The notes beneath the pieces are model-generated. The model saw only the letters and a list, made by a program, of their open reading frames with translations, had not been told where the DNA came from and searched no databases. This document shows, one piece after another, positions 1,776-62,926 of a stretch of DNA of 64,000 nucleotides. The stretch spans positions 59,482,408 to 59,546,407 of the forward strand of contig NC_068992.1 in assembly GCF_001194135.2 (NCBI RefSeq). Direction: 5' to 3'. This stretch comes from Octopus bimaculoides (taxonomy: Eukaryota). A program made the position numbers and the translations under genes. Numbering within the stretch: position 1 is the first letter of the stretch; each line of letters opens with the position of its first letter.

Positions 1776-1906
1776 ACAATAAAATCAAAGAAGTGCCACC
1801 ATTCGATGGATCAGGATTCCATCATCTTACCACTCTCAAAATTGAAGGAAATAGAATTCAAAACATTAACGAGTTCAATATACCAAATCTGAAAATACTG
1901 CATCTT
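1776..1906 (+). CDS. LRRC23: LRRC23 copy A exon (131 nt)
   Basis: ttacag|AC AAT AAA ... CAT CTT|gtaagt; LRR motifs; paralogue of 60740-60870. Confidence 0.9.
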
Positions 1907-2102
1907 GTAAGTCATAGTTTCTTAATCTTTGCTCTTTGGCACCCCACGCCCCAGTATTTGACTGGTACTTTAGTTTATGAACTCTTCAAGGTTGGAAGGC
2001 AAAGCTGACATCAACAAGAGTTCAACTCGGAATGTGAAGGGTTAGAAGAAGTACCACAAGGTATTTTTTTTCCCAGTGCTCTAACAATTCTGTCACCCAC
2101 TC

Positions 2103-2148
<46 letters not shown>

Positions 2149-2368
2149 CATCGTCATCGTCATCATCATCATTTCTACTAAAGGTACAATGCTTGAAATT
2201 TTGCAGGAGGGGGCTAGTCGATTACATCAACCCCAGTGCTCAACTGGTACTTATTTCATTGACCCCCTCAAAAGGATGAAAGGCAAAGTCGACCTCGGCA
2301 GAATTTGAACTCAGAATGTAAAGAGGAATAATAATGATGATGACGATGATTACGATGGCGATGACGGT

Positions 2369-2413
<45 letters not shown>

Positions 2414-8658: not shown

Positions 8659-11600
8659 NNNNNNNNNNNNNNNNNNNNNNNNNNNNNNNNNNNNNNNNNN
8701 NNNNNNNNNNNNNNNNNNNNNNNNNNNNNNNNNNNNNNNNNNNNNNNNNNNNNNNNNNNNNNNNNNNNNNNNNNNNNNNNNNNNNNNNNNNNNNNNNNNN
8801 NNNNNNNNNNNNNNNNNNNNNNNNNNNNNNNNNNNNNNNNNNNNNNNNNNNNNNNNNNNNNNNNNNNNNNNNNNNNNNNNNNNNNNNNNNNNNNNNNNNN
8901 NNNNNNNNNNNNNNNNNNNNNNNNNNNNNNNNNNNNNNNNNNNNNNNNNNNNNNNNNNNNNNNNNNNNNNNNNNNNNNNNNNNNNNNNNNNNNNNNNNNN
9001 NNNNNNNNNNNNNTGTGTGTGTATATGTTTGTGTGTCTGTGTTTGTCCCCCCAACATCGCTTGACAACCGTTGCTGATGTGTTTACATCCCCGTAACTTG
9101 GCGGTTCGGCAAAAGAGACCGATAGAATAAGTACTAGGCTTCTAAAGAATAAGTCCTGGGGTCAATTTGCTCGACTAAAGGCGGTGCTCCAGCATGGCCG
9201 CAGTCAAATGACTGAAACAGGTAAAAGAGTAAAAGAGATATATAGATATAGGTATATAGATATGTATATATACACACATATACATATATATATATATATA
9301 TATATACAGGTGTGGTTATTTGGTGAATAGTTTGTTTCCTAAGGACATGGTTCTGGGTTCAGTCCCACTGCATGACAACTTGGGCAAGCATCTTCTACAG
9401 TAGCTCTGGACTGACCTAAGCCTTGTGAGGTGGATTTGGTAGACGAAAACGGAAAGACCGTCGTGTGTGTATGTGTGTGTGTGTGGGGGGGGTGCGCTTG
9501 TGTTATTTTGTCTCCTTGTCTTGATATCACTTCTTAGTTGTAAAAGAGATTGCAGAATCGTTAACACACCTGACAAAATTTTTAGCGGCATTTCTTCCGG
9601 CTTTACGTTCTGAGTTCAAATACTGCCGAGGCCTTCTTTGCATCTAATCCTTTCGGGGTTGATAAAATAAATACCAGTTGAGTACTGAGGTCAATGTAAA
9701 TCAACGAGTCCCTTCTCAAATGCCTCCAAACAGTTCAATAAAGTTGTCTCCCTTGAGATTAGCTTTTCACAAGTCGTCTCCCTTGTATTAAAACTCCTCT
9801 TGCACAATAATTTAAAAATCGATTTATACAATAGAGCCAACGTGGTTTCAATTCGTACTTGTAACCGTTGTGACGAAAATGTTACATCATCTCTTTTCTT
9901 AATTTCTTATACATTTTAATGCATCCTGAAATAAACTTACACTCGTGCAAGTATGGTTGCTAACGATGCTTAAATGTTATCATTATTCCTATACATACGA
10001 AGGCGGCGAGCCGGCAGAATCGTTAAGTATTCCGTCTGTCTTTACGTTCTGAGTTCAAATCCCGCCCGATGTCGACTCCGCCTTTCATCTTTTCAGGGTC
10101 GATAAATTAAGTACCAATTGCGTACTGGGGTCGGTCTAATCGATTGACCACCCTCCCCCCAAATTTTGGGCCTTCTGCCTAGAGTAGAAAAGAATCGTTA
10201 GCACACTGGGCGAAATGCTTAGCGGTATTTCGTCCGTCCTTACGTTCTGAGTTCAAATTCCGTCGAGGTCGACTTTGCCTTTCATTCTTTCTGGGTCGAT
10301 AAATAAAAGTATTATTACTATATATGCTGATGTTATTTTCTTTATTATATAATATACAAACAACGATTTTTATATTTATTGGAATACGACGCATATGACA
10401 CAAACATGGTGGAAGAAAGAAGGAAAAGGAGAAAAAAGGAAAAACATCAATTCAACACCAAGTACCTCAATTGGTTGCATACCACAAGGTTCAAGCTACA
10501 TGCTTCTCACCTTTAACCTTTGACCTCTGTCTTCCCTTCACTCCTATCCACACATTAATTCAGATTCTTGTATAAGATGTGCTTTTTATATATTCTTAAG
10601 TGTAAAAATTGCCATGCATCTAATGTGACTGTATTACAGATGGAATACCAAGTGTATGAATATAAGATGAAACATTAAATTTGTTTTTTCCTCAAAAGCA
10701 AGTAGGGTTTTTTTTTATGGGAATATGCATCTTAATTACTGGCACCTACAGTATTTTCATCTCCCAACTTTTATCTCCAGGCCCAGCCCATGTCAGTGTG
10801 AAAGACTGATGTTAAAAGATGACTTATGCTTAATCCATTTCTTTGTTGTCTATATTTGTAGGGTCAAAATAAGATTACAAGCACTGAATGGGTTCTGGAC
10901 CTGGTTAATTTAGAAGAACTGAAACTCAACAACAATTTAATTGAGAAAACTCATGGCTTTAACTCCAACATGACGAAACTGAAATACATTGACCTGAAGT
11001 AGGTTTTCTGTTGGACTATTTAGTCTTTTCATATTCTCTTACTTTTAAACTGTGGAAGCGCAATGGCCTAGTGGTTAGGGCAGCGGACTTGCGGTCATAG
11101 GATCGCGGTTTCGATTCCCAGACTGGGCGTTGTGAGTGTTTATTGAGCGAAAACAGCTAAAGCTCCACGAGGCTCTGGCAGGGGATGGTGGCGAACCCTG
11201 CTGTACTCTTTCACCACAACTGTCTCTCACTCTTACTTCCTGTTTCTGTTGTGCCTGAATATCCCCGAGAACTACGTTAAGGGTACACTTGCATGTTAAT
11301 TTCACAAGCAGGCTGTTCCGTTGATCGGATCAACTGGAACCCTCGACGTCGTAAGCGAAGGAGTGCCAACAACAACTTTTAAACTATGAAATATCAACAT
11401 TTTCCACACACACACACACACACGCACATGTGCACACATACACAGGGTTCTGACTGACACAGATATACCAAACACCTTTGACCTCCTTCTCACCTTTAAC
11501 CTTTGACCTCTGTCTTCCCTTCAGTCCCATCCACACATTAATTCAGATTCTTGATGTACAGTAATGTCTCAATATAGGAATCGTTAGTATGCCAGGCAAA

Positions 11601-14131
11601 ATGCTTAGCGCTATTTCGTCTGCCGCTACATTCTGAGTTAAAATTCCGCCGACGTCAACTTTGCCTTTCATGCTTTCGGGGTCGATTAAATAAGTACCAG
11701 TTACGCACTGGGGTCGATGTAATCGACTTAGTCCCTTTGTCTGTCATTGTTTGTCCCCTCTATGTTTAGCCCCTTGTGGGCAATAAAGAATTAGATATAG
11801 GAGTTAATCCGTTCCTGGAGAACACTTGTAAAGTGAAAGCTCATAAGTGAATTTTACTCTTTTACTTGTTTCAGTCATTTGACTGCAGCCATGCTGGAGC
11901 ACCGCCTTTATTACTGTATTTCCGTCACAGTTTTAACAAGAGTAAAGATTAAAATATTCAGATGGGAGATAAATGAATGCAAACAAAGATGAGGGGGTGG
12001 ATGGGGATGGGGGTAATCTTGTATTTTGATTTTTGACTGGTCAATAATTTATATTTAGATATGGGTTAAGTAGTTTGACCTTTGACCTCTTCCCCCTCCC
12101 CAAAAAATGTTTCATAGGCATAAGTATGACTATGTGATTAAGAACCTTGCTCTACAACCACGGGATCTAGTCAGTCTCATTTGCAAAATGAGCCCCCTTT
12201 AATTTTGCTTGGATTACTTTCAATTTTGGTGCATTGATGCAACTCTGAATTTTGATTAGGATCAACCAATTACTTTACCTCGTAAATTAAAGTATCTGAT
12301 GTTATTTGGAATTAAAGTTGGGAAAGTTGGGTAATTTTGTTGAATCAAATTACGTCAGTTGGATGTTTCTTATAAAATGTTCCGCATCAACAATTTTAAA
12401 TGTTCCAGCATTTTTGATATTTTTCCCTGTCCTCATATTTTTAAATATTCCATCATTAGCAATTAATTTTTATCTCTGTCATCTTATTATAAATGTTTTG
12501 TTTAACATTAATAATAATATTTTGCAAACATCAAGATTTATTTTCCTAATCAATACTGGTTTCAAATTTTAGCACAAGGCTAGCAATTCGAGGGGAGGGG
12601 GTAAATCAATTATCGTATTTCAATGTGTATATGGAATCCTATTTTTTTGCCAAAAATTAGGTTAAAAAAATACGAAAGTTTCTTATACATGGATAGTATT
12701 ATAATCTTTTACAAAACCTTTTTTTCCAAATATTAAGCCCCCCCCCCAAAAAAAAAATTGGGGGACTTCTTCCTTATACATATGAGGGTTTCGATTTGCT
12801 CAACTAAAGGCAGTGCTCCAGCATGGCCGCAGTCAAATGACTGACACAAGTAAAAGAGATAAAAGAATAAGATAGAAAAATAATAGTCTCAAGTATTGGG
12901 ACAGGGTCAGCCATTTTTTGAGGGGAGGGGTAAGGCAACTACATTGATCTAAGTACTTGACTAGTATTTATTTTATCGCCCCTGAAAGGCTAAAAAGCAA
13001 AGAATCTCAGTGGGATTTGAACCGAGTATGTAAAGATGGACAAAATCTGGTAAGCATTTCGTCCAGCATGCTAACAGTTCTGCCAGAAAAAATAATGATT
13101 TTCAATTTTAGCGCAAGGCCAGTAATTTTGTTTTTGGAGAAGGGGTTAAGTTGATTACATCGATCCCCAGTACGCAACTGGTACTTATTTTATTGACCCC
13201 CCAAAAGCATGAATGGCAAAGTTGGCCTCAGTGGGATTTGAACTCAGAACATGGAGATGAAGAAGATGCTGCTAAGCGTTTTGCTCGGTGTGCTAACGAT
13301 TCTGCCAGCTCACCGCCTTAACTTAGAAAAATAATAACATGTTTTTACAAATACACAAATGAGAAATTTGTTTTAATTTTATTTTAAGGTAATAAATATG
13401 TTTCTTTTGATGATTAGTATTTATTTCATCTCTCTTCCTTTCTTTCTCTTTCTGTCTCAATCTCTCTCTCTTTCCCTTTCTCTCTCTCTCTTTCTCTCCC
13501 TTTTTCTCTCTCTGTCTCTTTCTCTCTCTGTCTCTTTCTCTCTCTTTTTCTCTCTCTCTCTGTCTCCCTTTCTATCTCTCTCTCTCTGTCTCTGTGTCTC
13601 TTTCGTTCTCTGTCTGTCTGTCTGTCTGTCTCTTTCTCTCTCTCTGTCTCCCTTTCTCTCTATCTGTCTCTTTCATTCCCTGTCTGTCTGTCTCTTTCTC
13701 TCTTTGCCTCTCTCTCTCTCTTACTATTTCCCCCTCTGCCTCTCTCTTTCTCTCTCACTCTCCTTTTCTCTCCTTCTTTCTCTCATTCCCCCCATTCTCC
13801 CCCTCTTCTTCCATTCAGAGAGAATAAAATTGCCCAGTACTATGATCTGAGCCAAATGTCTACTTTGCCACAACTGAACTCCTTGATGTTGAATGGTAAG
13901 TCCCTATATCTCACTTGTTATTGCATCACAAACCAAGACCTTCAATAGGTTTAGCCAAACAAATCAATCCCCTTTCACCAGTACCTATTTATAAGCCTGG
14001 TACTTAGTCTATTAGTCTATTTCTGCTGAACTACCAAGTTGCAGGGACGTTAACAAACCAACACCTGTTGCCAAAAGATGGTTAGGGAACCAATACAAGC
14101 ACATACGCGCATATACATACATAAATACACA

Positions 14132-14169
<38 letters not shown>

Positions 14170-14918: not shown

Positions 14919-14958
<40 letters not shown>

Positions 14959-16510
14959 TCGTTCTGGTCTAACGACCCTCCATGCTTGTTTTGTTCAGTT
15001 TCCTTGTATGTCTCCATTGTCATGTTTTTGTTCCCAACTTTGACCCTCCATAGATCCTAAATTTTATTTTAGAATTTATGGCAGCAACTGTCTTTGAAGA
15101 CTCATATTGTTGGTATTATCCATCATCATCATCATCATCATCGTTTAACGTCCGCCTTCCATGCTAGCATGGGTTGGATGATTTGACTGAGGAGTGGTGT
15201 AACCAGATGGCTACACTAGGCTCCAATCTGATTTGGCAGAGTTTCTACAGCTGGATGCCCTTCCTAACGCCAACCACTCCGAGAGTGTAGTGGGTGCTTT
15301 TATGTGCCACCTGCACGAAGGCCAGTCGGGCGGTACTGGCAATGGCCACGCTCAAAATGGTGTATTTTATGTGACACCTGCACAGGAGCCAGTTCGGCGG
15401 CACTGGCAACGATCTCACTTGAATGTCTTTACACGTGCCATCCGGCACAAGTGCCAGGAAGGCAATGCTGGGCACAGGTACCATTGACGGTTTCGCTTTC
15501 GCGTGCCCCAATAGGTCTTCGCAAGCTGAGGGTCATATATATATATATATATATATAATATAAAAAATATATAAATATATGCATATATACATACATATAT
15601 GTACATACCTACATATATATGTATATATACATGCATATATGGGTACAGGACATCAAAAAAACGTTAAACACAATGAGAAGCAAAAACATAGAAAATGAAC
15701 TTTTTTTGAACAACGAAAAAAACAGAGAAACGAGACATGCAACATAAAGAATATACCCCTTCATCAGTTGTCCCTGTTTCATCTACTCCGTGTTTCAAAG
15801 GTAATATATGTATGGGCTTCTTTCAGTTTCTGTCTACCATGTCTGTTCACAAGTCTTTGGTTGACCCAAGTTTATATTAGAAGGCACTTGTTCAAGGTGT
15901 CATGCAGTGGGGCTGAAACTGGAATCATATGGTTCAGACGCAAACTGCTTACTACATATTTTTCTCAAAAATATTTTACTTGCTTATTTTCGGAATCCAG
16001 AAAATCCTATATCTCAGGATGGCGACTACCGTGTTGAAATTCTGAGCATCTTAAAGACTCTCACAGTCTTGGATGAAGAAGAATTTACAGACGAAGATCA
16101 TGCAGAAGTAAGGGACATTGCCAAGCAGCGCCATAATTCTGAGGTACTGTGGTTCTTTTAAGCCTGTGATTGATAATATTTTCCAAACAGAATTCTTCTA
16201 TTGTTATTTAGTTCAAAGATTAGTTGTCAAATGACTGGTTGATAAGGTGATGTGGTAAAGAGAGAGAGAGAGAGGGAGAGAGGGAAGGAGAGAGAGAAAG
16301 AAGAAAGAGAGATGGTGTGATGTGTCAGAGGGAGAGAGAGTAAGAGAGAAAGAGAAAGACGGAGACAGAGCCTGAGAAAGAAAGATAAACAAAAATAAAT
16401 AGAGAGAGAGAAAGAGAGAAGAGATGACAAAATTTTAGAGAGACAATTGTCAGAGAGGGATATAACAAAATGTAAGAAGGATATGAGAAGCCACCAGAGA
16501 GAGAGAGAGA

Positions 16511-16559
<49 letters not shown>

Positions 16560-18284: not shown

Positions 18285-18544
18285 TCCACTTGTCTGGCTG
18301 GCACCAAGCCACTTCACTGATGGCACCAAATACAACTCCAGGAATGTTTCTGTCGTATTTATATTGTATTGATAAGATATTGATCTAATATTGATACAAT
18401 ATTGCTGTGAATATTAAAGTTATATTGATGTGTTGATTTAAAACTGAAATAAATAATGTTGATATAATATTTGTGCTTTTATAATGTAATACTTATGAAA
18501 TATTGTTGTGACATTGGTGTAATATTGATGCAATATTATTTTTG

Positions 18545-23373: not shown

Positions 23374-23493
23374 ATGGAAGAAGTGGAAGACCCGTGTCTC
23401 TCTGACCAAGATTTCACAAAACAACTTGAGAAATGTGTTTGTATTTTGAAAAAAGCTGGCACCGACAACGAAAAGCTGGCTGCACTAATGATG
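23374..23493 (+). CDS. NCDN: NCDN exon 1
   Basis: acaATG GAA...ATG ATG|gtttgt; MEEVEDPCLSDQDFTKQLEKCVCILKKAGTDNEKLAALMM. Confidence 0.85.
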
Positions 23494-25395: not shown

Positions 25396-25430
<35 letters not shown>

Positions 25431-38239: not shown

Positions 38240-38298
<59 letters not shown>

Positions 38299-38309
38299 TA
38301 TCATATACA

Positions 38310-38347
<38 letters not shown>

Positions 38348-44300: not shown

Positions 44301-47300
44301 TCCTAAGTAGGGCCCACCTTTTAGACTCTCAGCGGAACCGGAAAGAAAAAGTGCTGGTCATCAACGAAGAATACCAGGTTCATTGGGATTCTGTGTCAGG
44401 TTATTGGCTGTCAACTATGAAAGGTAATCATGACTTCCTTTTGAGAATTGTTCTGTGTTTTCTGAGTCCTTGCTGCTGTTTGTTTTGTCTACCCTCAGAC
44501 TGGATGGCCATGTATCTCCTTTACAATAGCACATCTGTTTCTGTCCACATTCTCTCTCTCTCTCTCACTGGGTAACCATGTTCCTCCTTTATAGCAAGAC
44601 ACCTGTTTCTGCCTCTCTGTCTCTCTCGAACTTTTTTTCATCTGACAGATCACCTCCTCCAACCCCCCCCCTCTCCTCTCAAAAGGATCTTTGTCTTGCT
44701 AGTTACTTGGTGACCCTGCCAATGTTGGTACCATGAAAAAGCATCCAGTCCTCACTGTAAAGTGGTTAGTATTTGGAAGGGCATCCAGCTCCCCCAAAAA
44801 AAAAGCCATGCCAAAATGGACACAGAAGTCTGGTGCAGGCTCCTGCCTGGTCAGCTCCTGTCAACCTGTCCAACCCATGCCAGCATTGGAAGATGGACGT
44901 TAAACGATGATGGTGGTGGTAAAATAACTAATTCTTCTGTATGTCTTGATTCAACTCCTTTGCTCTGTTGCTTCAGATAAAATTTCTATCCATCTCTTCC
45001 AGTGCTGACCAAATGTATCCAGAATCACCCACAGCTGACCACTACAGTGTTATTACAAACTGGCTGGATCCCTCGATTGTTAAAACTACTTGTTGATGTC
45101 CAGAGTAAGTATCCTTCATTCATTTCATTTGATGCAATGTGTGTGTGTGTGTGTATGAAAATAATGAGTCCTACAAAAAGTGTTTTGTTTCATCTGGATA
45201 TTTTATTAAAAGCAATGTTTCTCAAAGTTTTCTAATACATATTAAAACATTCAGTCCTAACACAGTTCTTTCTTCAAGTGGTCTAACCATGCTCCTCTGA
45301 GCTGGTAGCCCCACGAGTTACTCTGAGTGAGTCATTGTGGTAGTATTGATATTTCACCACTTCCATGATAACCAACGTTACTTTTTATTTGAGTGTAAGT
45401 TTGAAAGCTGAGTCAACAGAAACGAGTTATGACTGGACGAAATCTCCAGGCTGTTTAAATGTACAAATCTCTGATATCCAAGAGGTTAAAAGTGTCTGCT
45501 GAAGGGTGCCCAGGAGTCACGACCTCAAAGCATCCAGCCCCTTTAGAGTGTAAGATGTTAAGGACTGAAATGCTTGCCTGATGGGGTTTCTTCTCCGAAG
45601 ACCTTCTGCTGTTCAACTCTCTTGAGAGTTTATTACACTATATATGTGTGTGTATGTTTTTGTATATGTATTTTTTTTTTTTTTTGTGCGGGTGGCACAT
45701 GAAATGCACCATTTTGAGCGTGGCCGTTGCCAGTACTGCCTGACTGGCCTTTGTGCGGGTGACACGTAAAAGCACCCACTACACTCTCTGAGTGGTTGGC
45801 ATTAGGAAGGGCATCCAGCTGTAGAAACTCTGCCAAATCAGATTGGAGCCTGGTGTAGCCATCTGGTTTCACCAGTCCTCAGTCAAATCGTCCAACCCAT
45901 GCTAGCATGGAAAGCGGACGTTAAACGACGACGACGACAACATACACATGTTTGTAAATATATATGTATATATATATATAATAATAAGATGAGAGTATAG
46001 AAAGGTAATTAATAAATTATTATTTATTAATTAAAGAATTGACAAACATCCCTTACAGCAGTTTCAATTCAGGCTCTCAGAAAATTAATTAATTAAATCA
46101 AAAATTATATGAAAGTCGAATCTCTTCAGAGGTAGATAAAGGTATACACAGTAGGTGTTCAATTTCCTCATATTGAGTAAACAACTGCAAACCTATATAT
46201 ATATATATATATATATATAAGCATGTAAAAACCACTATCCAAACGTGTCCAATACCAGTGCTGCCTGACTAGCCCCCATGCTGGTGGCATGTAAAAAGCA
46301 CCCACTACAATCTCAGAGTGGTTGGCGTTAGGAAGGGCATCCAGCTGTAGAAACATTGCCAGATCAGATTGGAGCCTGGTGCAGCCTCCTGGTTTGCCAG
46401 TCCCCAGCATGGAAAACAGACATTAAATGATGATGATGGTAAGAAACTGCACTGGAATTAAAAGAAATTATACAAAACTGAGCTAACCCAAACGAAGGAC
46501 TATTGAAAGTATATGCTATTATAAAAAGCAAGGATATATTATTGCTGGGAAGCGCTCCTCCGCTCACTTTTATAAATTTGCTGTGTTGCTTAGAAAGTTT
46601 TGCACACTCCTACTTGACCTTACTTTCTCATTATTAAGAGTCCCTCCTTTCAACAAAATGCAGCACTCCTTTATTTCTTTGTTTCTCTTTCAATGTAATT
46701 TTTTCCTCCTCTGCTTCCTCTTGACTTCATTTTCTTCCTATCCTTCTCATCTTTAGTAATATTGTTGTTGTCTTCAAAAACCCATTTTGTTTTACTTTCT
46801 TTTCTCTAGAGATCAGTGTTCATGTGGATTATAGCAGTGCCTACCTGAACCTACTGTATGCCCTGATCATCACCAAGGAAGCTAGAACTGTGATAATCGA
46901 TAACTGTGGAGCTGAAGTGGCCAAGTAAGTTAAACACTAACACTGTTCTCTTCATCTTCATCATCATCATCATCATCATCGTTTAACGTCCGCTTTCCAT
47001 GCTAGCATGGGTTGGACGATTTGACTGAGGACTGGTGAAACCGGATGGCAACACCAGGCTCCAGTCTGATTTGGCAGAGTTTCTACAGCTGGATGCCCTT
47101 CCTAACGCCAACCACTCAGAGAGTGTAGTGGGTGCTTTTACGTGTCTTGTTGTTATGAAATGATGGATGATAACGAATAGCCAATACTTGATAATATATT
47201 ACCCATTTTTATCATGGGAACAGGCATGGCTGTGTGGTTAAGAAGTTAGCTTCTTGATCATAGGGTACTGGGTTCATCCCTATTGCATGACACCTTGGGC

Positions 47301-51801: not shown

Positions 51802-51831
51802 CTATGATGGTGTTTCCTCTTTCTGTGTATT
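51802..51831 (-). CDS. LRRC23: LRRC23 copy B terminal coding exon (NTQKEETPS*)
   Basis: ttttctctttccag|AAT...TCA TAG; mirrors 18255-18284. Confidence 0.75.
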   Translation of the reverse strand, partial: NTQKEETPS

Positions 51832-52358: not shown

Positions 52359-55300
52359 AGTCTTTGAAACGCCAGTGTTATAATGGTGGCAGCTGATGAA
52401 GGAAATGTCCTCTATGTGGCCTGTGTGTTTTCTGTACTCTGTTTACCATTTTGTCCATGTTTTTTTGCAACGTCATGTACCCAGATATGCATCTATATAT
52501 ACATGTAGATCAAGGTATGTACATACATGTACATATATATGCATATACTCATATATTATTTATATATATATATATATATTGCCATGTTTCTCTGTCTTTC
52601 TTACATCATATATGTCATCTCTTTGATACCTTGGTACCTTTCTATGTCTCTCTTTGAGACATTGTAACATTTCCTTCACCCTTTGACATCTTGCTGTGTA
52701 AAACAGTTATTGAAAAGTCTCTCACATCACAAGAACTGAGTGATGGTCAGAAAGGGAAGTGTTGGTGTTTGTAAGTCATACAAATATCGTAGAACGTACC
52801 TGAGCCTCTTGGCGCTCTTTTGAAACCTCATTAGCTTCATTTCTCTCTTCCTCCGTGACTTCAGAGTAATTCAATGTGAAAAGAGTTGTCAAGAAGCTAA
52901 GAACTTCAACGCGGAAATCTGCTTCTTTAGTGATTGGATTATCTGGATTTAAAAATGTTAATTAAAAAAAAAAAAAAACTGTGTATCAGCATGGCCACAG
53001 TCAAATGACTGAAACATGTAAAAATACATTAGAGTAAAGACACTCTTTGGTCACGAACGACCATGGGATTGCACCTAGGAAGTTATCCTTCAGACAAGGT
53101 TGTTTATGGAAGACCAAATGGTTGTGTTGCACATAAGCTCTCTCCTTCCATCAAACCGACATTGCTTGTACAGGTGCATGATGCACCACATGTCAGGTTT
53201 TGTTCAAGAAAACCACATGTCACCCGATCCAGGAATTGGACCCATGATCTCACAATCACGAGTGCAACGTCTTAGAAAGTAGGCCACATAGCCTTATACC
53301 AGTAATTATTATACTGTAGTTATTGATGCAGTTCATTACAAAGTGACCGTGACTGGCTCTCTGTCACTTACAATGACAAGGGTTCCAGTTGATCCGATTA
53401 ACAGAAAAGCCTGCTTGTGAAATTAACGTGCAAGTGGCTGAGTATTCCACAGATACACACGCCCTTAACATAGTTCCCAGGTAGGTTCAGTGCGACACAG
53501 AATGTGACAAGGCTGGCCCTTTGAAATACAGGTACTATTCATTTTTGCCAGCTGAGAGAACTGGAGCAACGTGAAATAAAGTGTCTTGCTCAAGGACACA
53601 ACATGTCACCAGGAATCGAACTCATGACCTTATGATTATGAGTAAACATCCATAATCACTAAGCCACATGCCTTCACCCATTGCAAAGTACAACGACATT
53701 GTCTCTGTAAATATTGCCAATATGATTATAAGTCGTGAGATGTGAGACTTACCGGCCAGCAACAAAACAGTAAGAGCTGGTAGACAGGCGAGTTTTTCTA
53801 TTTCGCAAAACTCCTCAATGACATTCTCTCTGAAATAGAGGAAGGAAAATGGACAGAATGCAAAGTGATGGCTATAAATTGCTCAATGTTTGAATATTTA
53901 ACCCTTTAACATTCAGATTATTGTCAAAAGTAATGCTTATTTATTCACAGGATCTTTGTCTTCCAAGTTACTTGGTGACCCTGTCAGTACTGGTGCCACT
54001 TAAAAAAAAAGCATTCAGTCTACGCTGTAAAGTGGTTGGCATTTGGAAGGGCAATCAGCTGTAGAAACCATGCCGAAACTGATCTCGCCTTTGCTGGTGC
54101 CATGTAAAAAGCACTGAGTCCACTCTGCAAGGGGGGGGGGGGGTTCAAGTTAGGAAGGGCATCCAGCCACAAAAAAAAAGAACCCATGCCAAAACAGATG
54201 CTGAAGCATGGTGCAGTCTTCTGCTCGGCCAGTTCCTGTCAAATCATCCAACCCATGGAAACAGCATGGAACACACAGATGTCTAGTGATGATGATGATG
54301 ATGATGTAACTTCACCATGCATTATTTTGTAGCTTTAAGATTTCAATGATGTGATTGTTTATTTCTATAAACACTGTATGTGTTAGAGGCCGAGTCTGGT
54401 CAGTTTGAGCATAAAATCAGGTGCAATATTTTGGTCTGATATGGTTGGTTTAAATGCTAACGGGTTAAAATGTGATGATAGTAAAATTGTTAATGTTAGA
54501 ATCAACATATCATCATCAACATTTAACGTTCGTTTTCCAAGCTGGTTTGGGTTGGACAGCTTGACAGGAACTGACAAGGCCAGGGGCTGCACCAAGTTCC
54601 ACAGTCGGTTTTGGCTTGTTTTCTATGGCTTGATATAATCGTTAATTAACACTGGCATATTTTAAAATATGTTGACAGCAAATTGCTAATTTGTGACATT
54701 TAAAATACAACGTGATGGGAGGAAAATGTTAATGCTGAACATTGAAAAGAAAAATTAGCAAAACATAATTTATTTAGTTATAATACCAACAAATATTAAA
54801 CCATTACAAGGCATGAGCTAGCAGAATCATACATAAGGTGCCATGCAGTGAGAGTGAACCAGGAACCATGTGGTTGGGAAGCAAACTTCTCACCACACAA
54901 CCACACCTGCACCTAAAATGTTACCTAAGGTAACATTATACTAACTCTTAATGATGGTGTATTAAGTTGTAATACTAACAGTACTAACAGTTAACTCATT
55001 TTCTCATGAAATCACATGATCTGTGACATCTGTTGTTTGGTGTCAATCACTGCCACTTTGCCAATCAGGAAATTCTGATTTTGTTTTGGACTTCATTGAA
55101 AGGAACAACGATGCATGGGGGGATGTAACAACAAGTCGAAATGTGTAACTCTTTTGTTACCATATTTCTCTTGAAGTAGACTGGTTTTGTTTCAATTAAT
55201 TTTGAAAATAACGAAGCTTTAAGTAAAATAGCTTTATCCTTATAAAGCTGGTTTTTGGAACATGAATTAAGATGGAAATTTGATGGACGGTTTTAATTTA

Positions 55301-58300
55301 GATCATTTTCAACAAGAAGTTAGTATCCTAGGAGTAGGGGAGGTTTCGGGTTGGTTGGTATCAAAAGAGTTAAACATTCTATTTAAAATCGGAATATAGT
55401 AGTAGATAAACTGAAACTTTTTTTTTTTTTTTGGTGAAGATCAACGGTCAAACTGCTTGGACCAATATATATATTGACCGGTCTAAAATTATAATACAAA
55501 TTCCTCTTGCCTTCTCTTTGTTTGCTTCCATTTATTTCCCATATGAATATTTTAGTCTTTACTCTTGATAAAATTGTGATGGAAATACATCAAGAATATA
55601 TGAATCAATGTGTGGCTGGGGTTGAAGGGAAGACAGAGGTCAGAGGTCAAAGGCGAGAAGGAGGAGATCAAAGGTGTTTGGTATGATATGTGTGTGTAAG
55701 ATGTTGATATTAATAGTATAAAAGTAGGAGAATATAAACAGACAAATCAATAAACTAGATAGTTTAAAAGAAAACCTACTTCAGGTCAATGTATTTCAGT
55801 TTTTTCATGTCCTTATTAAATCCATCAAGTTTGTCTATAGAATTGTTGTTGATTTCAAAGACTTCTAAATTAACCAGATTTGAAATCCACTGAAGATCTG
55901 TCATCTTATTATAACCCTACAAAAACAGACAACAAAGGAATGGATTAAACACAATTATCTTTTAACAACCATCTGGAGATAAAGGTTGGGAGATGAAAAT
56001 ACTGTTTGCCACTATATAGGATGCACTTTCACAGAAGACAAACCCCAAAGTTTTTGGTGGAAAAAAGTTAACCCTTGAGCATTTAAACTGACCATATTGG
56101 GCTCAAATATTCTACCTTTTTTACGGAGAAAATGACTAAATCTGGCCTCTCAAACCTATTCTGCAATTTAGTTCTAAAAATAAACAATCAGGCGCAGGAG
56201 TGGTTGTGTGGTAAGTTGCTTGCTTACCAACCACATGGTCCCAGGTTCAGTCCGACTGCGTGGCACCTTGGGCAAGTATCTTCTACTATAGCCTCGGGCT
56301 GACTAAAGCTTTGTGAGTGGATTTGGGAGATGGAAATTCGAAGAAGCCTGTCGTATATATATATATATATATATGTATATATGTGTGTGTGTGTATATAT
56401 GTTTGTATGTCTGTTTGTCCCCCCAGTTTGGCAACCAATGCTGGTATGTTTAGGTCCCTGTAACTTAGCGGATCGGCAAAAGAGACTGATAGAATAAGTA
56501 CTAGGCTTACAAAGAATAAGCTCTGGGGTCGATTTGCTCGACAATAAAGGCGGTGCTTCAGCATGGCCACAGTCAAATGACTGAAACAAGTAAAAGAGTA
56601 AACACATCATTGAAATTTCAAAGCTATGAGATAATAAGGCATGATTAATTCAAAGCAATTTGAATAAATAAATAGATATTACATTTGACAGAATAATATG
56701 AGTGCTAAAGGGTTAATGTTTTATCATACACTCATACACTAGGTATCACACCTTTAATACAGTTGCATTAGATGCATGGCAATTTTTTGTTGTTTAAGAA
56801 TAAAGACATGCATGTCTTACACACCAGCATGTACAGTAATAATAATAATAATCTTTCTTTCTTTGGGTAACATGTTCAGAATTTGGGGCACAGGCGATTC
56901 TCCGTTCTTTATTTTCTGTAACAATTCCATTTCCTGATGTTTAATGCCCATTTCATTCCAACCAGTCCGTCATGCTTGACAGCCATATCATCCTTTGCCT
57001 TCCTCTGCTTCTTTTCCCTTCATTACTAAATTCTCTGGGTCCACTTTCCTCATCACATGATCAAGAAATCTCAGTTGCTTTGTCCTCATCTCACAAAGAA
57101 GATCTCTTTTTATAACAGCTAGGGGTCATCACTTCTTCATTAAACACTTTGTCCGTCCATGCTATCTTCAATATCCTCCTTGAGAACCACATTTCACAGC
57201 TCTCCAAGTACTTTCTCATTTCTGATGCTATAGATCATGCCCCACTGCCATACATTAACACATGATGATGAGGATGATAATGATGATGATCATCGTTATC
57301 ATCAATATTTAATGCCCATCTTCCATGCATGCATGGGTAGGATGGTTGGTAGGAGCCAGCCAGGTAGAAAAACTACCCTAGGCTACTGTTTTGGCAGGGT
57401 TTTTATGACTGGATGCCCTCCCTAACACAAACCACTGAGCAGAGGGGACTTAGTGCTTTTTACGTGGCACTACCCTAGGCTACTGTGTCTGTTTTGGCAT
57501 GGTTTTTACAGCTGGATGCCCTTCCAAATGCCAACCACTTTACAGTGTGGACTAGATGCTTTTTACATGGCACCAGCACTCGCAGGGCCACCAAGTAACT
57601 TGCAACACAAGGAGTTATGAGATGAGCAGGGACATTTGAGGAGAGGAATATAGAATTCAATATACAGATATTTGCCATGTAATAAAGGTGTCAAGCTCGC
57701 AGAATCGTTTCTGTGCTGGACAAAATGCTTAGCAGAATTTCTTCTAACTTTAGACGAGCCTTCTAACTAAAGCAGCGAGCTGGCAGAAACATTAGCACGC
57801 CGGGCGAAATGCTTAGCGGTATTTCGTCTGCTACTACATTCTGAGTTCAAATTCCACCGAGGTCGACTTTGCCTTTCATCCTTTCGGGGTCGATTAAATA
57901 AGTACTAGTTAGTTACACACTGGGGTCGATATAATCGACTTAATCCGTTTGTCTGACCTTGTTTGTCCCCTCTGTGTGTAGCCCCTTGTGGGCAATAAAG
58001 AAATAAGAATTTCTTCTAACTTTATGTTCTGTGTTAAAATGCCACTAGGGATCAATAAACACAGGGGTCAATGTAATCGACTTACTCACTCCACAAAATT
58101 GCTGGCCTTGTGCCAAAACCTGAGGCCAAGGTTTGCTATATAAATACTAAACACTTTCCTTTGCAGTTTCTATTAATTGAACAGTATTTTTAACATTTAC
58201 TCTCTTAATCCTTTTGTGTTCAGATTACTTCTGTGAAATGCTAATGCTTATTTATTCACATTGTATTGAATTAATCATGAAATTATCTTGTAGCTTAAAG

Positions 58301-59764: not shown

Positions 59765-59818
<54 letters not shown>

Positions 59819-62061
59819 GGCACTCAGAGAGCGCAAATCTCCACCAAAGCAACACCAATGTCCTCTCAACGGTTAGCCAGAGATGATTTTTAAAATGAGA
59901 ATATCTGAAATAAACTCGACTGCTCTCACAAACGAGAATACTAAAAATGAACTCGATTGCTCTCGAAAATTAAGTAAAAGAAAAAAAACAGAAAAATAAT
60001 CCACAGTCCACCACCACCTCCTCCCCTTCACCACCACCACTACCCCTTTCCTTCTCTCACCACTCTAACTCTGCCTCATCCTCCAAACATTTTATGCAAT
60101 TCTCTCTCCCCAAAACAACAGGAGCCTCTTTTGCCACTTTTTTTTATCTGTCAGAAAAAGCAACTGAATCTCTTTAAGCAAATGAATGCAGAAACACACA
60201 TGTCTTACGATCCAATGGTGTCATTCACAGTCCAATATGTGTTCTCAAACATATCTAGGAAGAGAATTTTCTCCTGGGACTATTTCTGCAGTGGAAGGTC
60301 TTCTTGTGTCCAAATGCACTTGAACATGTAAAATATGACTACGCAAATAAATAAAGATATATAGGCGCAGAAATGGCTGTGTGGTTAAGAAGCTTACTTT
60401 CCAACCATGTGGTTTTAAGATCAATCCCATTGAACAGTACCTTCTATTATAGCCCTGGGTTGACCAAAGTCTTGTGAGTGGATTTGTTAAGCAGAAACTG
60501 AAAGAAGCCCATCGTGTATTTAAATATATATTACATATATGCATGTGTGTCTTTGTGTTTTGATGTGTTTATGCCAGGCTTTGTAAAAGAAGTACTGGGA
60601 TCAATTTGTTTGACTAAAAACCCATTAAGGCAATGCTCTGGCATGGCCACAGTTCAATGACTGAAACAAGTAAAATATAAAAGATATATATTTTGGTAAA
60701 ATTTGAATCAAAGTCAGACATTTAGAAATTATGACTCACAAGAGAAAGTGACGTTAGACTTGGTAAATTGATATCTTTGATGGTTTCAATAGCATTCTCT
60801 TGGAGTTTGAGAACGGTAAGTTTAGAGTATGTCTCTTCATTCAATTGTGATAGTTCCTTGATTTTGTTGGCTGGAACAGAGTCAAAAACAAAGAAATGTC
60901 AACAAGCAGCAATGTTAGGGATAAAAATCCAAAATTACAGGTAAAAACTCAATTAAAATCAATTTATTAAAAATTAAAATTAAATTAAGTTTCACAGTAT
61001 TAAATATAAATATATAGTTTTAGGGAAAAGAACCAAGGTTCATGAACTCATCGATGAAAATCCACTGTCACATATAGAAAAATTAATAAGTAAAAGCACA
61101 ATAAATGAGTATAATATAATATCATATCTTAATCTTATGATATTTACTTTGTATTATATTATACTTATTTATTGTGCTTTTAATTATTAATTTTTCTATA
61201 TGTGACAGTGGATTTTCATCGATGAGTTCATGAACCTTGGTTCTTTTCTCTAANNNNNNNNNNNNNNNNNNNNNNNNNNNNNNNNNNNNNNNNNNNNNNN
61301 NNNNNNNNNNNNNNNNNNNNNNNNNNNNNNNNNNNNNNNNNNNNNNNNNNNNNNNNNNNNNNNNNNNNNNNNNNNNNNNNNNNNNNNNNNNNNNNNNNNN
61401 NNNNNNNNNNNNNNNNNNNNNNNNNNNNNNNNNNNNNNNNNNNNNNNNNNNNNNNNNNNNNNNNNNNNNNNNNNNNNNNNNNNNNNNNNNNNNNNNNNNN
61501 NNNNNNNNNNNNNNNATATATATATATATATAAAATGCATATATATATATTATATATATATAATATACATATATGTATATATATATAAGATACATATATA
61601 TATTAACTGGTACTCAGTTGGTTACGGTGACAAGGGTTCCAGTTGATCTGATCATCCGCCAGCTTGTGAAATAAATGTGCAGCAAGTGGCTGAGCACTCC
61701 ACAGACACGTGTACCCTTAATGTAGTTCTCAGGAAGATTCAGCATGACACAGAGTGTGACAAGGCTGGCCCTTTGAATTTACAGGTACTCCTCATTTTTG
61801 CCAGCTGAGTGGACTGGAGCAATGTGAAATAAAGTGTCTTGTCCAAGGACACAATGTGTTGGCAGGAACTGAACTCATGACCTTATGATTGTAAGCTGAA
61901 TACCCTGACCACTTAGTCACGCACCTTGGCGTTAGGAAGGGCATCCAGCTGTAGAAACTCTGCCAAATCAGACTGGAGCCTGGTGTTGCCATCCGGTTTC
62001 ACCAGTCCTCAGTCAAATCGTCCAACCCATGCTAGCATGGAAAGCGGACGTTAAACGATGA

Positions 62062-62099
<38 letters not shown>

Positions 62100-62926
62100 G
62101 ACATATAAGATAGGTATGGCCAGTCTATTTGGTTACTCTGGGTTTCAGGTCCATAAACTGCTTAGCTTTACAACATTTCTCTTGACCCTAAATCCGTTGA
62201 CCTATGGCCTCTCTAGGAAATGGAGGAAGAAAAGACTTTATTATTCTGTCAACAACAAGGGATCATCTCCCTTTGATGACTATTTGTAATTGACCCTGTT
62301 GGCCTGTGGATCCCAGGATGCCAGCAAGAAATTCCTGAAATGCAAGCAGGGTGTGAAGATTTCTGTCTGGGAGTTGAGGATGCTCCCTGGGTCGAGGAAG
62401 TTTTTTATTTGGACAGTTTGACAGGAGCGGCTTTGTTTGCATCCCTGTAACTTAGCAGTCTGGCAAAAGTGATTGATAGTATAAGTACTAGACTGATGAG
62501 GGGTGGTGGTGGGAGATTTGATTGATTAAATCATTTAAGGAGGAGGTTGGTGCCCTGTCCAGCATGGCTGCAGTCCAATGACTGAAACAAGTAAAAAGTA
62601 AAAGACAAATGGTAAAGGATACAAACATTTGACACCAAAGTTGTCCTCACAGAAATAAGGTATACTTACTACTGAGGTCTATATGTCTGACAAGGGGGTG
62701 TGACAGTCCCTCAGAAATGTTCTCGATCTTGTTATTACTCAAGGAAATGTATTGTAAAAAAGGATGTGGTTTAATGTCCACCTCTTCAATGATGTTTTTG
62801 TCTGCTTTCAGAGACAACAGATTTGGTAAGAAGTCTAAAGGGCTTAAACTGGATAACTGATTGTTGCTCACATCAACAATTCTCAAATGAATATATCTCT
62901 CAAGAATGCATATGTTGGTTAGCTCC
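51802..62926 (-). CDS. LRRC23: Leucine-rich repeat protein 23-like, copy B (5' exons lie beyond the window end). Exons 62926-62670, 60870-60740, 55916-55780, 53829-53753, 52942-52800, 51831-51802
   Basis: Minus-strand GT-AG exons join in frame to ELTNICILERYIHLRIVDVSNNQLSSLSPLDFLPNLLSLKADKN...SHPLVRHIDLS-TNKIKELSQLNEETYSKLTVLKLQENAIETIKDINLPSLTSLSL-GYNKMTDLQWISNLVNLEVFEINNNSIDKLDGFNKDMKKLKYIDLK-ENVIEEFCEIEKLACLPALTVLLLA-DNPITKEADFRVEVLSFLTTLFTLNYSEVTEEERNEANEVSKERQEAQ-NTQKEETPS*. The YIHLRxVDxSxN...LSPL...LLxLKADxN segment matches LRRC23 as I recall it. No stops or frameshifts. Confidence 0.9.
52800..52942 (-). CDS. LRRC23: LRRC23 copy B exon (143 nt, LRRcap)
   Basis: aatccag|AT AAT CCA ... 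GCT CAG|gtacgt. Confidence 0.88.
53753..53829 (-). CDS. LRRC23: LRRC23 copy B exon (77 nt)
   Basis: tatttcag|A GAG AAT GTC ... GCC G|gtaagt. Confidence 0.88.
53902..54464. mobile_element. TTAA-flanked (piggyBac-like) MITE with nested SINE
   Basis: TTAA|CCCTTTAACATT...AATGCTAACGGG|TTAA; SINE inserted at about 53950-54305. Confidence 0.7.
55149..55369. mobile_element. Second TTAA-type MITE family
   Basis: (G)TAA|CTCTTTTGTTACC...GGTATCAAAAGAG|TTAA terminal inverted repeats. Confidence 0.6.
55780..55916 (-). CDS. LRRC23: LRRC23 copy B exon (137 nt)
   Basis: tttgtag|GGT TAT AAT ... CTG AA|gtaggt. Confidence 0.9.
56072..56712. mobile_element. TTAA-flanked (piggyBac-like) MITE, same family, with nested full-length SINE
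   Basis: TTAA|CCCTTGAGCATT...GTGCTAAAGGG|TTAA; SINE at 56191-56600; further partial copies at about 43067-43200 and 58205-58410. Confidence 0.72.
56191..56600 (+). mobile_element. tRNA-derived SINE (family A, OK/OR-type octopus SINE), full length
   Basis: GGCGCAGGAGTGGTTGTGTGGTAAG head, CCTTGGGCAAG core, internal (TA/TG)n, tail ...GACTGAAACAAGTAAAAGAG; more than 15 related copies, e.g. 1338-1670, 8468-9237, 31325-31650, 34459-34850, 40570-40930, 48460-48830, 60362-60685. Confidence 0.85.
56950..57255 (-). mobile_element. RTE-clade LINE RT C-terminal remnant
   Basis: Minus strand YGSGA*S...LESCEMWFSRRILKIAWTDKVFNEEV...QLRFLDHVMRK...KRSRGRQRMIWL. Confidence 0.72.
57753..58005 (+). mobile_element. 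Family B SINE nested inside an older family B copy
   Basis: 19-bp TSD AGAATTTCTTCTAACTTTA at 57734-52 and 58006-24. Confidence 0.82.
58570..58889 (-). mobile_element. Truncated second copy of the same mariner family (5' end only)
   Basis: TA+CGAGGTGGTATCAAAAAGTTCC TIR, same subterminal region, and ATG GAC AGG AAG TTA GAA (MDRKLELRANTKFC). Confidence 0.88.
60740..60870 (-). CDS. LRRC23: LRRC23 copy B exon (131 nt)
   Basis: gttccag|CC AAC AAA ... TCT CTT|gtgagt. Confidence 0.9.
61020..61253. repeat. Long near-perfect inverted repeat (foldback)
   Basis: Arms 61020-61121 and 61152-61253, about 102 bp with about 4 differences, 30-nt spacer. Confidence 0.9.
62670..62926 (-). CDS. LRRC23: LRRC23 copy B exon (257 nt)
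   Basis: ttgccag|G GAG CTA ... CTC AGT A|gtaagt on the minus strand; 85 codons of LRR repeats. Confidence 0.92.

What the first reader, a model, noticed from the sequence alone, without database searches (positions are those of the whole stretch)
1776..62926. Two divergent LRRC23 paralogues in inverted orientation bracket neurochondrin
Seen: copy A (+) and copy B (-) have five matching exons of identical length (131, 137, 77, 143, 30 nt), identical phases and intact frames, arranged as LRRC23-A > NCDN > < LRRC23-B. By hand count only about 73 of 170 aligned residues (43%) are identical, so this is not an assembly duplicate or allele. Established: LRRC23 is an axonemal radial-spoke (RS3) protein needed for sperm motility and is normally single-copy. 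Inference: a lineage-specific inverted duplication produced two functional radial-spoke LRR proteins, possibly specialised for sperm versus somatic cilia. Copy B has no ORF-track signal beyond one exon, so it could easily be unannotated or fragmented.
Basis: partly seen in the sequence, partly recalled or inferred. Interest (0 to 1): 0.85.

Follow-up and report, generated by a model that had tools for sequence, protein, structure and literature searches.

The report
Octopus LRRC23 gene pair flanking neurochondrin
Octopus bimaculoides carries two old, divergent but intact copies of the cilia and sperm-tail gene LRRC23, facing each other across the neurochondrin gene; both are already annotated in public databases, and this is an ordinary lineage-specific gene duplication whose functional meaning is untested.

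Summary
Copy A (+) and copy B (-) each have exons of 131, 137, 77, 143 and 30 nt with canonical AG/GT sites, matching phases and open frames. They are 43% identical over 171 residues. Neurochondrin (+) lies between them. No exon is within 275 nt of an assembly gap.

The same A> NCDN> <B order is present in the independent chromosome-scale assemblies of O. vulgaris and O. sinensis, so mis-scaffolding, haplotigs and alleles are excluded. Both copies best match LRRC23, the radial-spoke-3 head protein, by sequence and predicted fold. Together with the one Argonauta gene found they form a 99%-supported octopod clade inside LRRC23, apart from LRGUK.

The duplication is old: dS(A,B) is about 1.2, against 0.17-0.20 between Octopus species. 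Both copies keep full reading frames in three species. Argonauta's gene sits in the B position, so B is probably the parental locus.

Two corrections. Both genes are already annotated as LRRC23 (XP_014769222.1, XP_014769221.1). The 131/137/77 exon lengths are ancestral, since bivalves share them. Sperm-versus-cilia specialisation is untested. This is a real but ordinary lineage-specific duplicate of modest interest.

The parts
1776..1906 (+). LRRC23 copy A, coding exon 4 of 8 (131 nt). Exons 1-3 lie upstream of the window.
   Evidence: AG/GT boundaries and frame. The spliced product is 100% identical to XP_014769222.1 / P0003.
10862..10998 (+). LRRC23 copy A, exon 5 (137 nt)
13819..13895 (+). 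LRRC23 copy A, exon 6 (77 nt)
16001..16143 (+). LRRC23 copy A, exon 7 (143 nt; LRR cap and acidic helix)
18255..18284 (+). LRRC23 copy A, last coding exon (27 nt plus TAG; LVPNEGNPS*)
23374..45235 (+). Neurochondrin (NCDN) coding region; ends are approximate and exons were not individually delimited
   Evidence: Pfam PF05536 at 81.5 bits. Pieces at about 23.4, 29.4, 38.1 and 41.1 kb match profile positions 5-30, 114-158, 320-361 and 429-466 in order.
62670..62926 (-). LRRC23 copy B, exon 3 (257 nt)
   Evidence: 100% identical to XP_014769221.1 / P0001.
60740..60870 (-). LRRC23 copy B, exon 4 (131 nt)
55780..55916 (-). LRRC23 copy B, exon 5 (137 nt)
53753..53829 (-). LRRC23 copy B, exon 6 (77 nt)
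52800..52942 (-). LRRC23 copy B, exon 7 (143 nt)
51802..51831 (-). LRRC23 copy B, last coding exon (27 nt plus TAG; NTQKEETPS*)
63920..63941 (-). First coding exon of the RefSeq model of copy B (MVLGSVL, then Q split across the junction; donor GTATGG). It lies inside a SINE-like repeat and is probably not the ancestral start.
   Evidence: O. vulgaris and O. sinensis B have a normal 64-residue N-terminus encoded by two exons 2.4-6.6 kb upstream of exon 3, which would lie beyond the window end.
10697..10861 (+). Intron flank upstream of A exon 5. It is 81-84% identical to the flank of B exon 5 (55917-56046, - strand), which is more than the exon itself (68-73%).

Best explanation
The window is from Octopus bimaculoides. 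It contains the 3' five exons of one LRRC23 gene (A, + strand), the whole neurochondrin gene (+), and six exons of a second LRRC23 gene (B, - strand).

Shown:
- A and B are true paralogues of the axonemal radial-spoke-3 head protein LRRC23.
- They arose by a duplication in the octopod lineage, long before O. bimaculoides split from O. vulgaris/sinensis.
- Both have been kept as intact 8-exon genes in all three Octopus genomes, in the same A> NCDN> <B order.

Inferred:
- B is the copy at the parental locus. The one LRRC23 gene found in Argonauta is also tail-to-tail with NCDN, and B is closer to other animals' LRRC23 in sequence (40-42% versus 36-38% identity to bivalves) and has a short acidic N-terminal tail (41 aa, against 57-75 aa in other animals).
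- A is the derived copy. It was placed on the other side of NCDN either by an inverted duplication, or by a tandem duplication followed by inversion of NCDN plus the proximal copy. It then roughly doubled its acidic N-terminal tail, to 133-155 aa with net charge -36 to -42.
- Both products most likely still work as LRRC23 does in mammals. There, two LRRC23 molecules per RS3 head each clamp a different adenylate-kinase domain of AK9 with an N-terminal beta-hairpin and the LRR surface, and present acidic tails to the central apparatus.
- The two octopus proteins have probably divided that job, either between cell types (sperm flagellum versus epithelial cilia) or between the two non-equivalent sites in one RS3 head. 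Which of these applies is not known.
For: Identity of the genes:
- The best PDB sequence matches for both copies are LRRC23 chains: B at 2.5e-48 and A at 4e-28, with LRGUK next at 4e-19 and 6e-13.
- AlphaFold models of A and of the full-length B orthologue best match the LRRC23 chains of mouse RS3 (9d2f_B and 9d2f_C) and of bovine sperm (9fqr_Xm), with TM 0.89-0.93 normalised to the target.
- Both carry RefSeq names 'LRRC23'.

Lineage specificity:
- In the NJ tree the octopod clade (A from two species, B from two species, Argonauta) has 99% bootstrap inside LRRC23, and LRGUK falls outside.
- No third Octopus LRRC23 was found, even with a profile containing bivalve sequences or in the exhaustive representative search.
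- A, B and Argonauta share a one-codon insertion (257-nt versus 254-nt exon).

Age and retention:
- dS(A,B) is 1.17 and dN 0.40 in O. vulgaris. Orthologue dS is 0.17-0.20.
- Complete 8-exon models translate exactly in O. vulgaris and O. sinensis for both copies.

Synteny:
- The same gene order is present in O. vulgaris and O. sinensis.
- The Argonauta gene is convergent with NCDN, about 1 kb apart.

Acidic tail lengths.

Mechanism in mammals: two LRRC23 per RS3 head bind AK9 (bioRxiv 10.1101/2025.05.19.654877). LRRC23 loss removes the RS3 head, and the C-terminus is needed for flagellar localisation (PMC10721216).
Against: - No expression, proteomic or localisation data for either copy were reachable, so 'functional' rests on intact frames and dN/dS alone.
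- Between-species dN/dS is high. A is 0.71 (bootstrap 0.40-1.3, on only 171 codons). B is 0.51 (0.31-0.94). Relaxed constraint on A cannot be excluded.
- Timing relative to Argonauta is unresolved. NJ gives A+B 75% versus B+Argonauta 24%, and informative quartet sites split 3/4/2.
- I could not see the far side of NCDN in Argonauta, so an A-type copy there is not excluded.
- No squid, cuttlefish or Nautilus LRRC23 was retrieved, so 'octopod-specific' could in fact be 'coleoid' or 'cephalopod'.
- The O. bimaculoides B models lack the N-terminal hairpin region. The window ends before the place where those exons should lie.
Confidence: 0.8

Rival explanations
1. Assembly artefact: the minus-strand copy is a mis-oriented or mis-placed contig, an uncollapsed haplotig or an allele in a gap-rich Illumina scaffold.
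For: The window has 11 N runs. Five of them lie between the last coding exon of A and the last coding exon of B, three in the A-NCDN spacer and two inside NCDN.
Against: The copies are only 43% identical in protein and 63% in DNA. Each has its own orthologue at 81-83% protein identity in other species. The same A> NCDN> <B order is found on single chromosome-scale records of O. vulgaris and O. sinensis. NCDN pieces are collinear across the gaps.
Confidence: 0.01
2. One copy, most likely A or the N-terminally truncated O. bimaculoides B, is a decaying or non-functional duplicate rather than a working radial-spoke protein.
For: dN/dS between species is 0.71 for A, with an interval that includes 1. 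Both O. bimaculoides B models start in SINE-derived sequence and lack the region that forms the AK9-binding hairpin in mouse. All octopod LRRC23 branches are very long compared with other animals.
Against: Since a duplication with dS about 1.2, both copies have kept eight exons, all splice sites and uninterrupted frames in three species. dN/dS between A and B is about 0.34. Both fold confidently as LRRC23: pLDDT is above 85 over most of the LRR domain (only the loop of the N-terminal hairpin is lower) and TM is about 0.9. O. vulgaris and O. sinensis B have a complete N-terminus.
Confidence: 0.06
3. The duplication is much older than octopods (stem coleoid or stem cephalopod), so it is not an Octopus or octopod novelty. 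Under this reading Argonauta has simply lost copy A, or it is unannotated there.
For: dS(A,B) is near saturation. Argonauta's gene sits in the B position and groups with B in 24% of bootstraps. Quartet sites do not resolve the order. No decapodiform or Nautilus sequences were available to test it.
Against: NJ favours A+B over B+Argonauta by 75% to 24%. A is closer to B (distance 0.80-0.93) than either is to Argonauta (1.07-1.26). Only one Argonauta LRRC23 surfaced in a search whose profile included both A and B.
Confidence: 0.25
4. One copy belongs to a different ancient LRR family (LRGUK, PPP1R7/SDS22, DRC3) and only resembles LRRC23 through generic LRR similarity.
For: All these families share SDS22-type LRRs and an LRR cap, and they appear lower in the same hit lists.
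Against: Both copies score 30-95 bits higher against LRRC23 than against the next family, over an end-to-end collinear alignment. They share LRRC23's 8-exon structure with bivalve LRRC23. They sit inside the LRRC23 clade with LRGUK as outgroup.
Confidence: 0.01

Closest known systems
Mammalian LRRC23 (radial spoke 3 head subunit; PDB 9d2f chains B/C, 9fqr chain Xm)
   Same: Same architecture: acidic N-terminal tail, a short helix and beta-hairpin, SDS22-type LRRs, an LRR cap and a C-terminal acidic helix. Identity is 38-41% in the structural alignments. Predicted-fold TM is about 0.9.
   Different: The octopus has two genes instead of one. Both are on very long branches. A has a tail about twice as long and B a shorter one. 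Axonemal location and AK9/RSPH9 binding are not shown for either.
Tetrahymena Lrrc23A / Lrrc23B (PMC12399478)
   Same: This is an independent case of two LRRC23 paralogues in one genome. Both are proposed as RS3-head components and they differ in their acidic tails.
   Different: It is a ciliate-specific duplication unrelated to the octopus one. The Tetrahymena proteins have proteomic and proximity-labelling support, whereas the octopus pair has none.
Bivalve LRRC23 (Potamilus, Solemya; single gene found in each)
   Same: Same 8 coding exons with identical 131/137/77-nt exons and phases. Identity to A and B is 36-42%.
   Different: Only one copy was found per species. There is no NCDN within 10 kb. 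These sequences evolve slowly (distance to the hemichordate is 0.43-0.52, against about 1.2 for the octopus copies). Their equivalent exons are 254, 113 and 155 nt, against 257, 110 and 143 nt in Octopus.
LRGUK (leucine-rich repeat and guanylate kinase domain protein)
   Same: Its LRR domain is the next-best relative.
   Different: It scores much lower (72 versus 168 bits for B). It carries a guanylate kinase domain that is absent here, and it is the outgroup in the tree.

Membership tests
LRRC23 | The closest characterised relative by sequence is LRRC23, over the whole LRR and cap region, clearly ahead of other SDS22-type LRR families | tested here: met
   B scores 167.8 bits (2.5e-48) against LRRC23 versus 72.3 bits against LRGUK. 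A, as a 162-aa fragment, scores 101.5 bits versus 54.1 bits against PPP1R7.
LRRC23 | Falls inside the LRRC23 clade in a gene tree that has LRGUK as outgroup | tested here: met
   NJ on 245 columns and 23 sequences: the octopod clade has 99% bootstrap and sits within LRRC23. This is a distance method only; no ML tree was made.
LRRC23 | Domain architecture: acidic disordered N-terminus, helix plus beta-hairpin, LRR solenoid, LRR cap, C-terminal acidic helix | tested here: met
   Alignments A1 and A6. The AlphaFold models show strands at 42-45/56-60 (B orthologue) and 134-139/147-152 (A) before the LRRs, and a long C-terminal helix. The O. bimaculoides B models lack the N-terminal part.
LRRC23 | Predicted fold superposes on experimentally determined LRRC23 in RS3 | tested here: met
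   The top three Foldseek hits for both models are 9d2f_B, 9d2f_C and 9fqr_Xm, with TM (target-normalised) 0.89-0.93 and E of 1e-17 to 1e-19.
LRRC23 | Gene structure shared with undisputed LRRC23 orthologues | tested here: met
   All have 8 coding exons. The 131/137/77-nt exons are identical in length in both Octopus copies, in Argonauta and in two bivalves.
LRRC23 | Located in the radial spoke 3 head of motile axonemes; binds AK9 and RSPH9; loss removes the RS3 head | not testable with these tools
   Known for mouse, human and bovine (PMC10721216; bioRxiv 10.1101/2025.05.19.654877). There are no data for octopus.
Lineage-specific retained gene duplicate (paralogue pair) | Each copy has its own orthologue in related species, at conserved positions | tested here: met
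   A orthologues are XP_029643750.1 and CAI9731312.1. B orthologues are XP_029643796.1 and CAI9731314.1. Order and orientation are the same.
Lineage-specific retained gene duplicate (paralogue pair) | Both copies are under purifying selection | tested here: inconclusive
   dN/dS between A and B is about 0.34. For B between species it is 0.51 (0.31-0.94). For A between species it is 0.71 (0.40-1.3), so the interval includes 1.
Lineage-specific retained gene duplicate (paralogue pair) | Both copies are transcribed, with distinct expression or distinct structural roles | not testable with these tools
   No transcript-derived copies appear in the collection for these proteins (sources listed). No paper mentions them.

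The most novel reading that the evidence does not exclude
The two octopus LRRC23 paralogues may have partitioned the two structurally non-equivalent LRRC23 positions of a single RS3 head, each gating a different AK9 adenylate-kinase domain. One would carry a long acidic tail and the other a short one. This would make octopus a natural heteromeric version of a complex that is homomeric in mammals, and a convergent parallel to Tetrahymena Lrrc23A/B. Alternatively, they may build distinct sperm-type and cilia-type RS3 heads.
Probability: 0.2. Interest if true: 0.5.

Novelty: new member of a known kind. Interest (0 to 1): 0.3.

Why it matters
LRRC23 is required for the RS3 head and for sperm motility in mouse and human. 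The RS3 head holds two LRRC23 molecules in different environments.

An animal lineage that keeps two strongly diverged LRRC23 genes, with very different acidic tails, could show whether those two positions, or sperm versus epithelial axonemes, place different demands on the protein.

It also shows that octopod LRRC23 evolves far faster than the near-static gene of corals, bivalves and hemichordates, which may reflect reproductive-protein evolution.

Beyond that, this is a routine retained duplicate. Both genes already carry correct names in RefSeq and UniProt. The practical gain is a note that the O. bimaculoides model of copy B has a doubtful N-terminus.

Tried and rejected
- RNA-structure explanation for the conserved intron flanks of the 137-nt exon. 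Folding z-scores are -0.1 and -0.6, and the consensus structure has a weak covariation term. Rejected as unsupported.
- Dispersed-repeat explanation for the same flanks. They occur only at the two paralogous sites in the window. Rejected. A separate downstream block (A 11440-11560) has a local 97% copy at 10503-10570.
- Recent gene conversion in O. bimaculoides. A paralogue-specific 24-nt indel and paralogue-specific substitutions are shared across species. Rejected. An older conversion remains possible.
- Search for a third, 'canonical' slow-evolving LRRC23 in Octopus. None was found.
- Search for squid or Nautilus LRRC23. None was retrieved. The word-indexed searches and the top-150 list of the exhaustive search returned only Octopus and Argonauta among cephalopods.
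- NCDN linkage in bivalves. Absent within 10 kb, which is uninformative.
- Exon-length synapomorphies (110 and 143 nt) as evidence that A and B exclude Argonauta. They are equally parsimonious on both topologies, so I did not use them.
- My first A-versus-B dN/dS calculation was out of frame. It was corrected.
- Pfam on the mariner-like ORFs gave only sub-threshold HTH hits.


Full report
**Source and gaps.** The window is Octopus bimaculoides: spliced products from both strands are 100% identical to RefSeq proteins of that species. It contains 11 runs of N. I tested these first, as the scan's note asked. Every N run lies in an intron or between genes. The closest exon-to-gap distance is 275 nt. 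The concatenated exons align end to end, without gaps, to mouse and bovine LRRC23. No coding exon is therefore hidden in a gap, and only intron lengths are uncertain.

**The observation.**
- Copy A (+) has exons at 1776-1906, 10862-10998, 13819-13895, 16001-16143 and 18255-18284.
- Copy B (-) has exons at 60740-60870, 55780-55916, 53753-53829, 52800-52942 and 51802-51831, plus an upstream 257-nt exon at 62670-62926.
- The lengths are 131/137/77/143/30 in both copies. All internal junctions are AG...GT, phases are the same and the frames are open.
- Between the two copies lies neurochondrin on the + strand. Pfam PF05536 scores 81.5 bits against a cut-off of 22. Four pieces match the profile in ascending order across two gaps.

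**What the two genes are.**
- By sequence, both copies hit the LRRC23 chains of the bovine sperm and mouse respiratory-cilia RS3 structures far better than any other LRR protein. B scores 2.5e-48 against 3.8e-19 for LRGUK. The 162-aa fragment of A scores 4.2e-28 against 1.7e-13 for PPP1R7.
- AlphaFold models of full-length A and of the full-length B orthologue are confident over the LRR domain. Their three best PDB fold matches are the LRRC23 chains 9d2f_B, 9d2f_C and 9fqr_Xm, with target-normalised TM of 0.89-0.93.
- In an NJ tree with LRGUK as outgroup, Octopus A (two species), Octopus B (two species) and the one LRRC23 found in Argonauta hians form a clade with 99% bootstrap inside LRRC23.
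- The refutation condition 'one copy belongs to another LRR family' is not met.

**Already annotated.**
- Copy A is XP_014769222.1 / A0A0L8HUR9 (413 aa). Copy B is XP_014769221.1 (265 aa) / A0A0L8HUT1 (272 aa). Both are named LRRC23.
- Orthologues exist in O. sinensis (A XP_029643750.1, B XP_029643796.1) and in O. vulgaris (A CAI9731312.1, B CAI9731314.1).
'Fragmented' is half right. Both O. bimaculoides B models begin with short peptides encoded in SINE-like repeat sequence (for example 63920-63941). The O. vulgaris and O. sinensis B proteins are 323 aa with a normal N-terminus, encoded by two exons 2.4-6.6 kb upstream of the 257-nt exon. That position lies beyond the window's end.

**Not an assembly artefact.** These are independent chromosome-scale assemblies.
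- On O. vulgaris chromosome OX597825.1, A lies at 72.979-73.026 Mb (+), NCDN at 73.032-73.058 Mb (+) and B at 73.061-73.082 Mb (-).
- O. sinensis CM016870.1 shows the mirror image.

**Gene structure.**
- Exact spliced models were rebuilt for five cephalopod and two bivalve genes, and all translate exactly. All have eight coding exons.
- The 131/137/77-nt exons are identical in length in Octopus A, Octopus B, Argonauta and both bivalves. These lengths are ancestral to molluscan LRRC23 and say nothing specific about A versus B.
- The 257-nt exon (254 nt in bivalves) is shared by A, B and Argonauta. The 110-nt and 143-nt exons are shared only by Octopus A and B. That pattern is equally parsimonious on either placement of Argonauta.

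**Age and selection.**
- Between O. bimaculoides and O. sinensis/vulgaris, dS is 0.17-0.20. dN/dS is 0.71 for A (bootstrap 0.40-1.3, 171 codons) and 0.51 for B (0.31-0.94, 257 codons).
- Between A and B over 285 gaplessly aligned codons in O. vulgaris, dS is 1.17, dN is 0.40 and the ratio is about 0.34. In O. bimaculoides dS is 0.94 over 171 codons.
- The duplication is thus at least about six times older than the species split. Both copies have kept complete frames and splice sites since then, which argues against a pseudogene.
- All octopod LRRC23 branches are very long. Distances to the hemichordate are about 1.2 for the octopus copies, against 0.27-0.5 among the coral, hemichordate and bivalve sequences themselves. 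This is lineage-wide acceleration.

**Which copy is parental, and when.**
- Argonauta's gene is convergent with NCDN, about 1 kb away. This is the B arrangement.
- B is also the more conservative copy. It is 40-42% identical to bivalves against 36-38% for A, and it has 6 unique changes against 13 for A in the quartet analysis.
- I therefore infer that B holds the parental position and A is the derived copy.
- Whether Argonauta split before the duplication (NJ 75%) or after it (24%) is unresolved, and informative sites split 3/4/2.
- I could not read the far side of NCDN in Argonauta. No decapodiform or Nautilus LRRC23 was retrievable. 'Octopod lineage' is as precise as the evidence allows.
- Bivalve LRRC23 has no NCDN within 10 kb.

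**Likely function (inferred).**
- In mouse, the RS3 head contains one AK9, two AK7 and two LRRC23. Each LRRC23 inserts an N-terminal beta-hairpin into a different AK9 catalytic domain, and the head presents an acidic surface to the central apparatus (bioRxiv 10.1101/2025.05.19.654877).
- Loss or C-terminal truncation of LRRC23 removes the RS3 head and causes asthenozoospermia (PMC10721216).
- Tetrahymena has two LRRC23 paralogues, both proposed as RS3-head components (PMC12399478).
- Both octopus proteins keep the hairpin region, the LRRs, the cap and the C-terminal helix. They differ markedly in the acidic N-terminal tail: A has 133-155 aa with net charge -36 to -42, and B has 41 aa with net charge -19. 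Other animals have 57-75 aa.
- The most likely reading is that both are RS3-head subunits that have divided the ancestral role.
- Nothing here tests that. No transcript-derived sequences or papers on these genes were found.

**An unexplained detail.**
- The intron sequence flanking the 137-nt exon is more alike between paralogues than the exon is. The upstream 165 nt are 81-84% identical, against 68-73% for the exon.
- Collinear blocks continue about 350 nt downstream in B, interrupted in A by insertions.
- It is not a dispersed repeat. It predates the species split, because a 24-nt indel specific to one paralogue is shared across species. It is not alignable in Argonauta, and it does not fold better than shuffled sequence.
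- With dS(A,B) about 1.2, neutral intron sequence should be unalignable.
- Either an old local gene conversion between the inverted copies or constraint on splicing signals (the donor is the weak GTAGGT in all copies) could explain it.

**Verdict.** The core interpretation is supported: a lineage-specific inverted pair of intact LRRC23 paralogues around NCDN. The functional specialisation is untested. The 'unannotated' suggestion is wrong. This is a new instance of a familiar kind of event, of modest interest.

Noticed in passing
window 10697-10861 and 10999-12095 (+) versus 55433-56046 (-): Intron sequence flanking the 137-nt exon is more conserved between the two paralogues (81-84% upstream, 73-84% downstream) than the exon itself (68-73%). 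This is despite coding dS of about 1.2. The pattern is conserved across three Octopus species in both paralogues and absent in Argonauta. There is no RNA-structure signal.
   Followed up: partly
window 63920-63941 (-), and beyond the window end: Both public O. bimaculoides models of copy B (XP_014769221.1 and A0A0L8HUT1) start with peptides encoded in SINE-like repeats. They lack the roughly 64 N-terminal residues present in O. vulgaris and O. sinensis B. The true 5' exons probably lie outside the window or in unassembled sequence.
   Followed up: partly
proteins P0003, P0008, P0214 (copy A exon 1, upstream of the window): Copy A has an acidic N-terminal tail of 133-155 aa (net charge -36 to -42). 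This is about twice the length seen in other animals' LRRC23. Copy B's tail is shorter than usual (41 aa).
   Followed up: partly
tree (all octopod LRRC23): Octopod LRRC23 genes sit on very long branches compared with the slowly evolving gene of corals, hemichordates and bivalves. Between-species dN/dS is 0.5-0.7. This points to lineage-wide acceleration of an otherwise conserved axonemal protein.
   Followed up: partly
window 21267-21596 and 21952-22185 (-); 29762-30459 (+); a related fragment near 58570-58707 (-): Remnants of mariner/Mos1-type transposases. One has a PPYSPDIAPSDYHLF-type catalytic motif and HTH pieces. Pfam HTH_48 scores 21.2 bits, just under its cut-off. They lie in the A-NCDN spacer, in an NCDN intron, and in the intron between the 131-nt and 137-nt exons of copy B.
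   Followed up: partly
window 31235-31308 (+) and 33975-34065 (+): There is a tRNA-Thr(GGT)-like sequence (Rfam tRNA 36.6 bits, ARAGORN) and a tRNA-Ser(TGA)-like sequence (ARAGORN only) inside NCDN introns. They may be tRNA genes or tRNA-derived SINE heads.
   Followed up: no
e.g. window 15132-15384 versus 45685-45937 (92%); 8005-8179 versus 46969-47144 (95%); 1340-1584 versus 63743-63979 (83%): There are many copies of a few SINE-like families on both strands in all introns and spacers. They dominate any self-comparison of the window and create long spurious ORFs.
   Followed up: no
window 10503-10570 versus 11440-11560 (+): There is a 97% identical local duplication within the introns flanking exon 5 of copy A. 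It corresponds to a single block in copy B (55586-55701).
   Followed up: no
L003 (Argonauta hians BAAFZT010000048.1), 10001-29884: The Argonauta LRRC23 gene is compact (9.9 kb, against 19-47 kb in Octopus). It lies about 1 kb from NCDN, tail to tail.
   Followed up: partly
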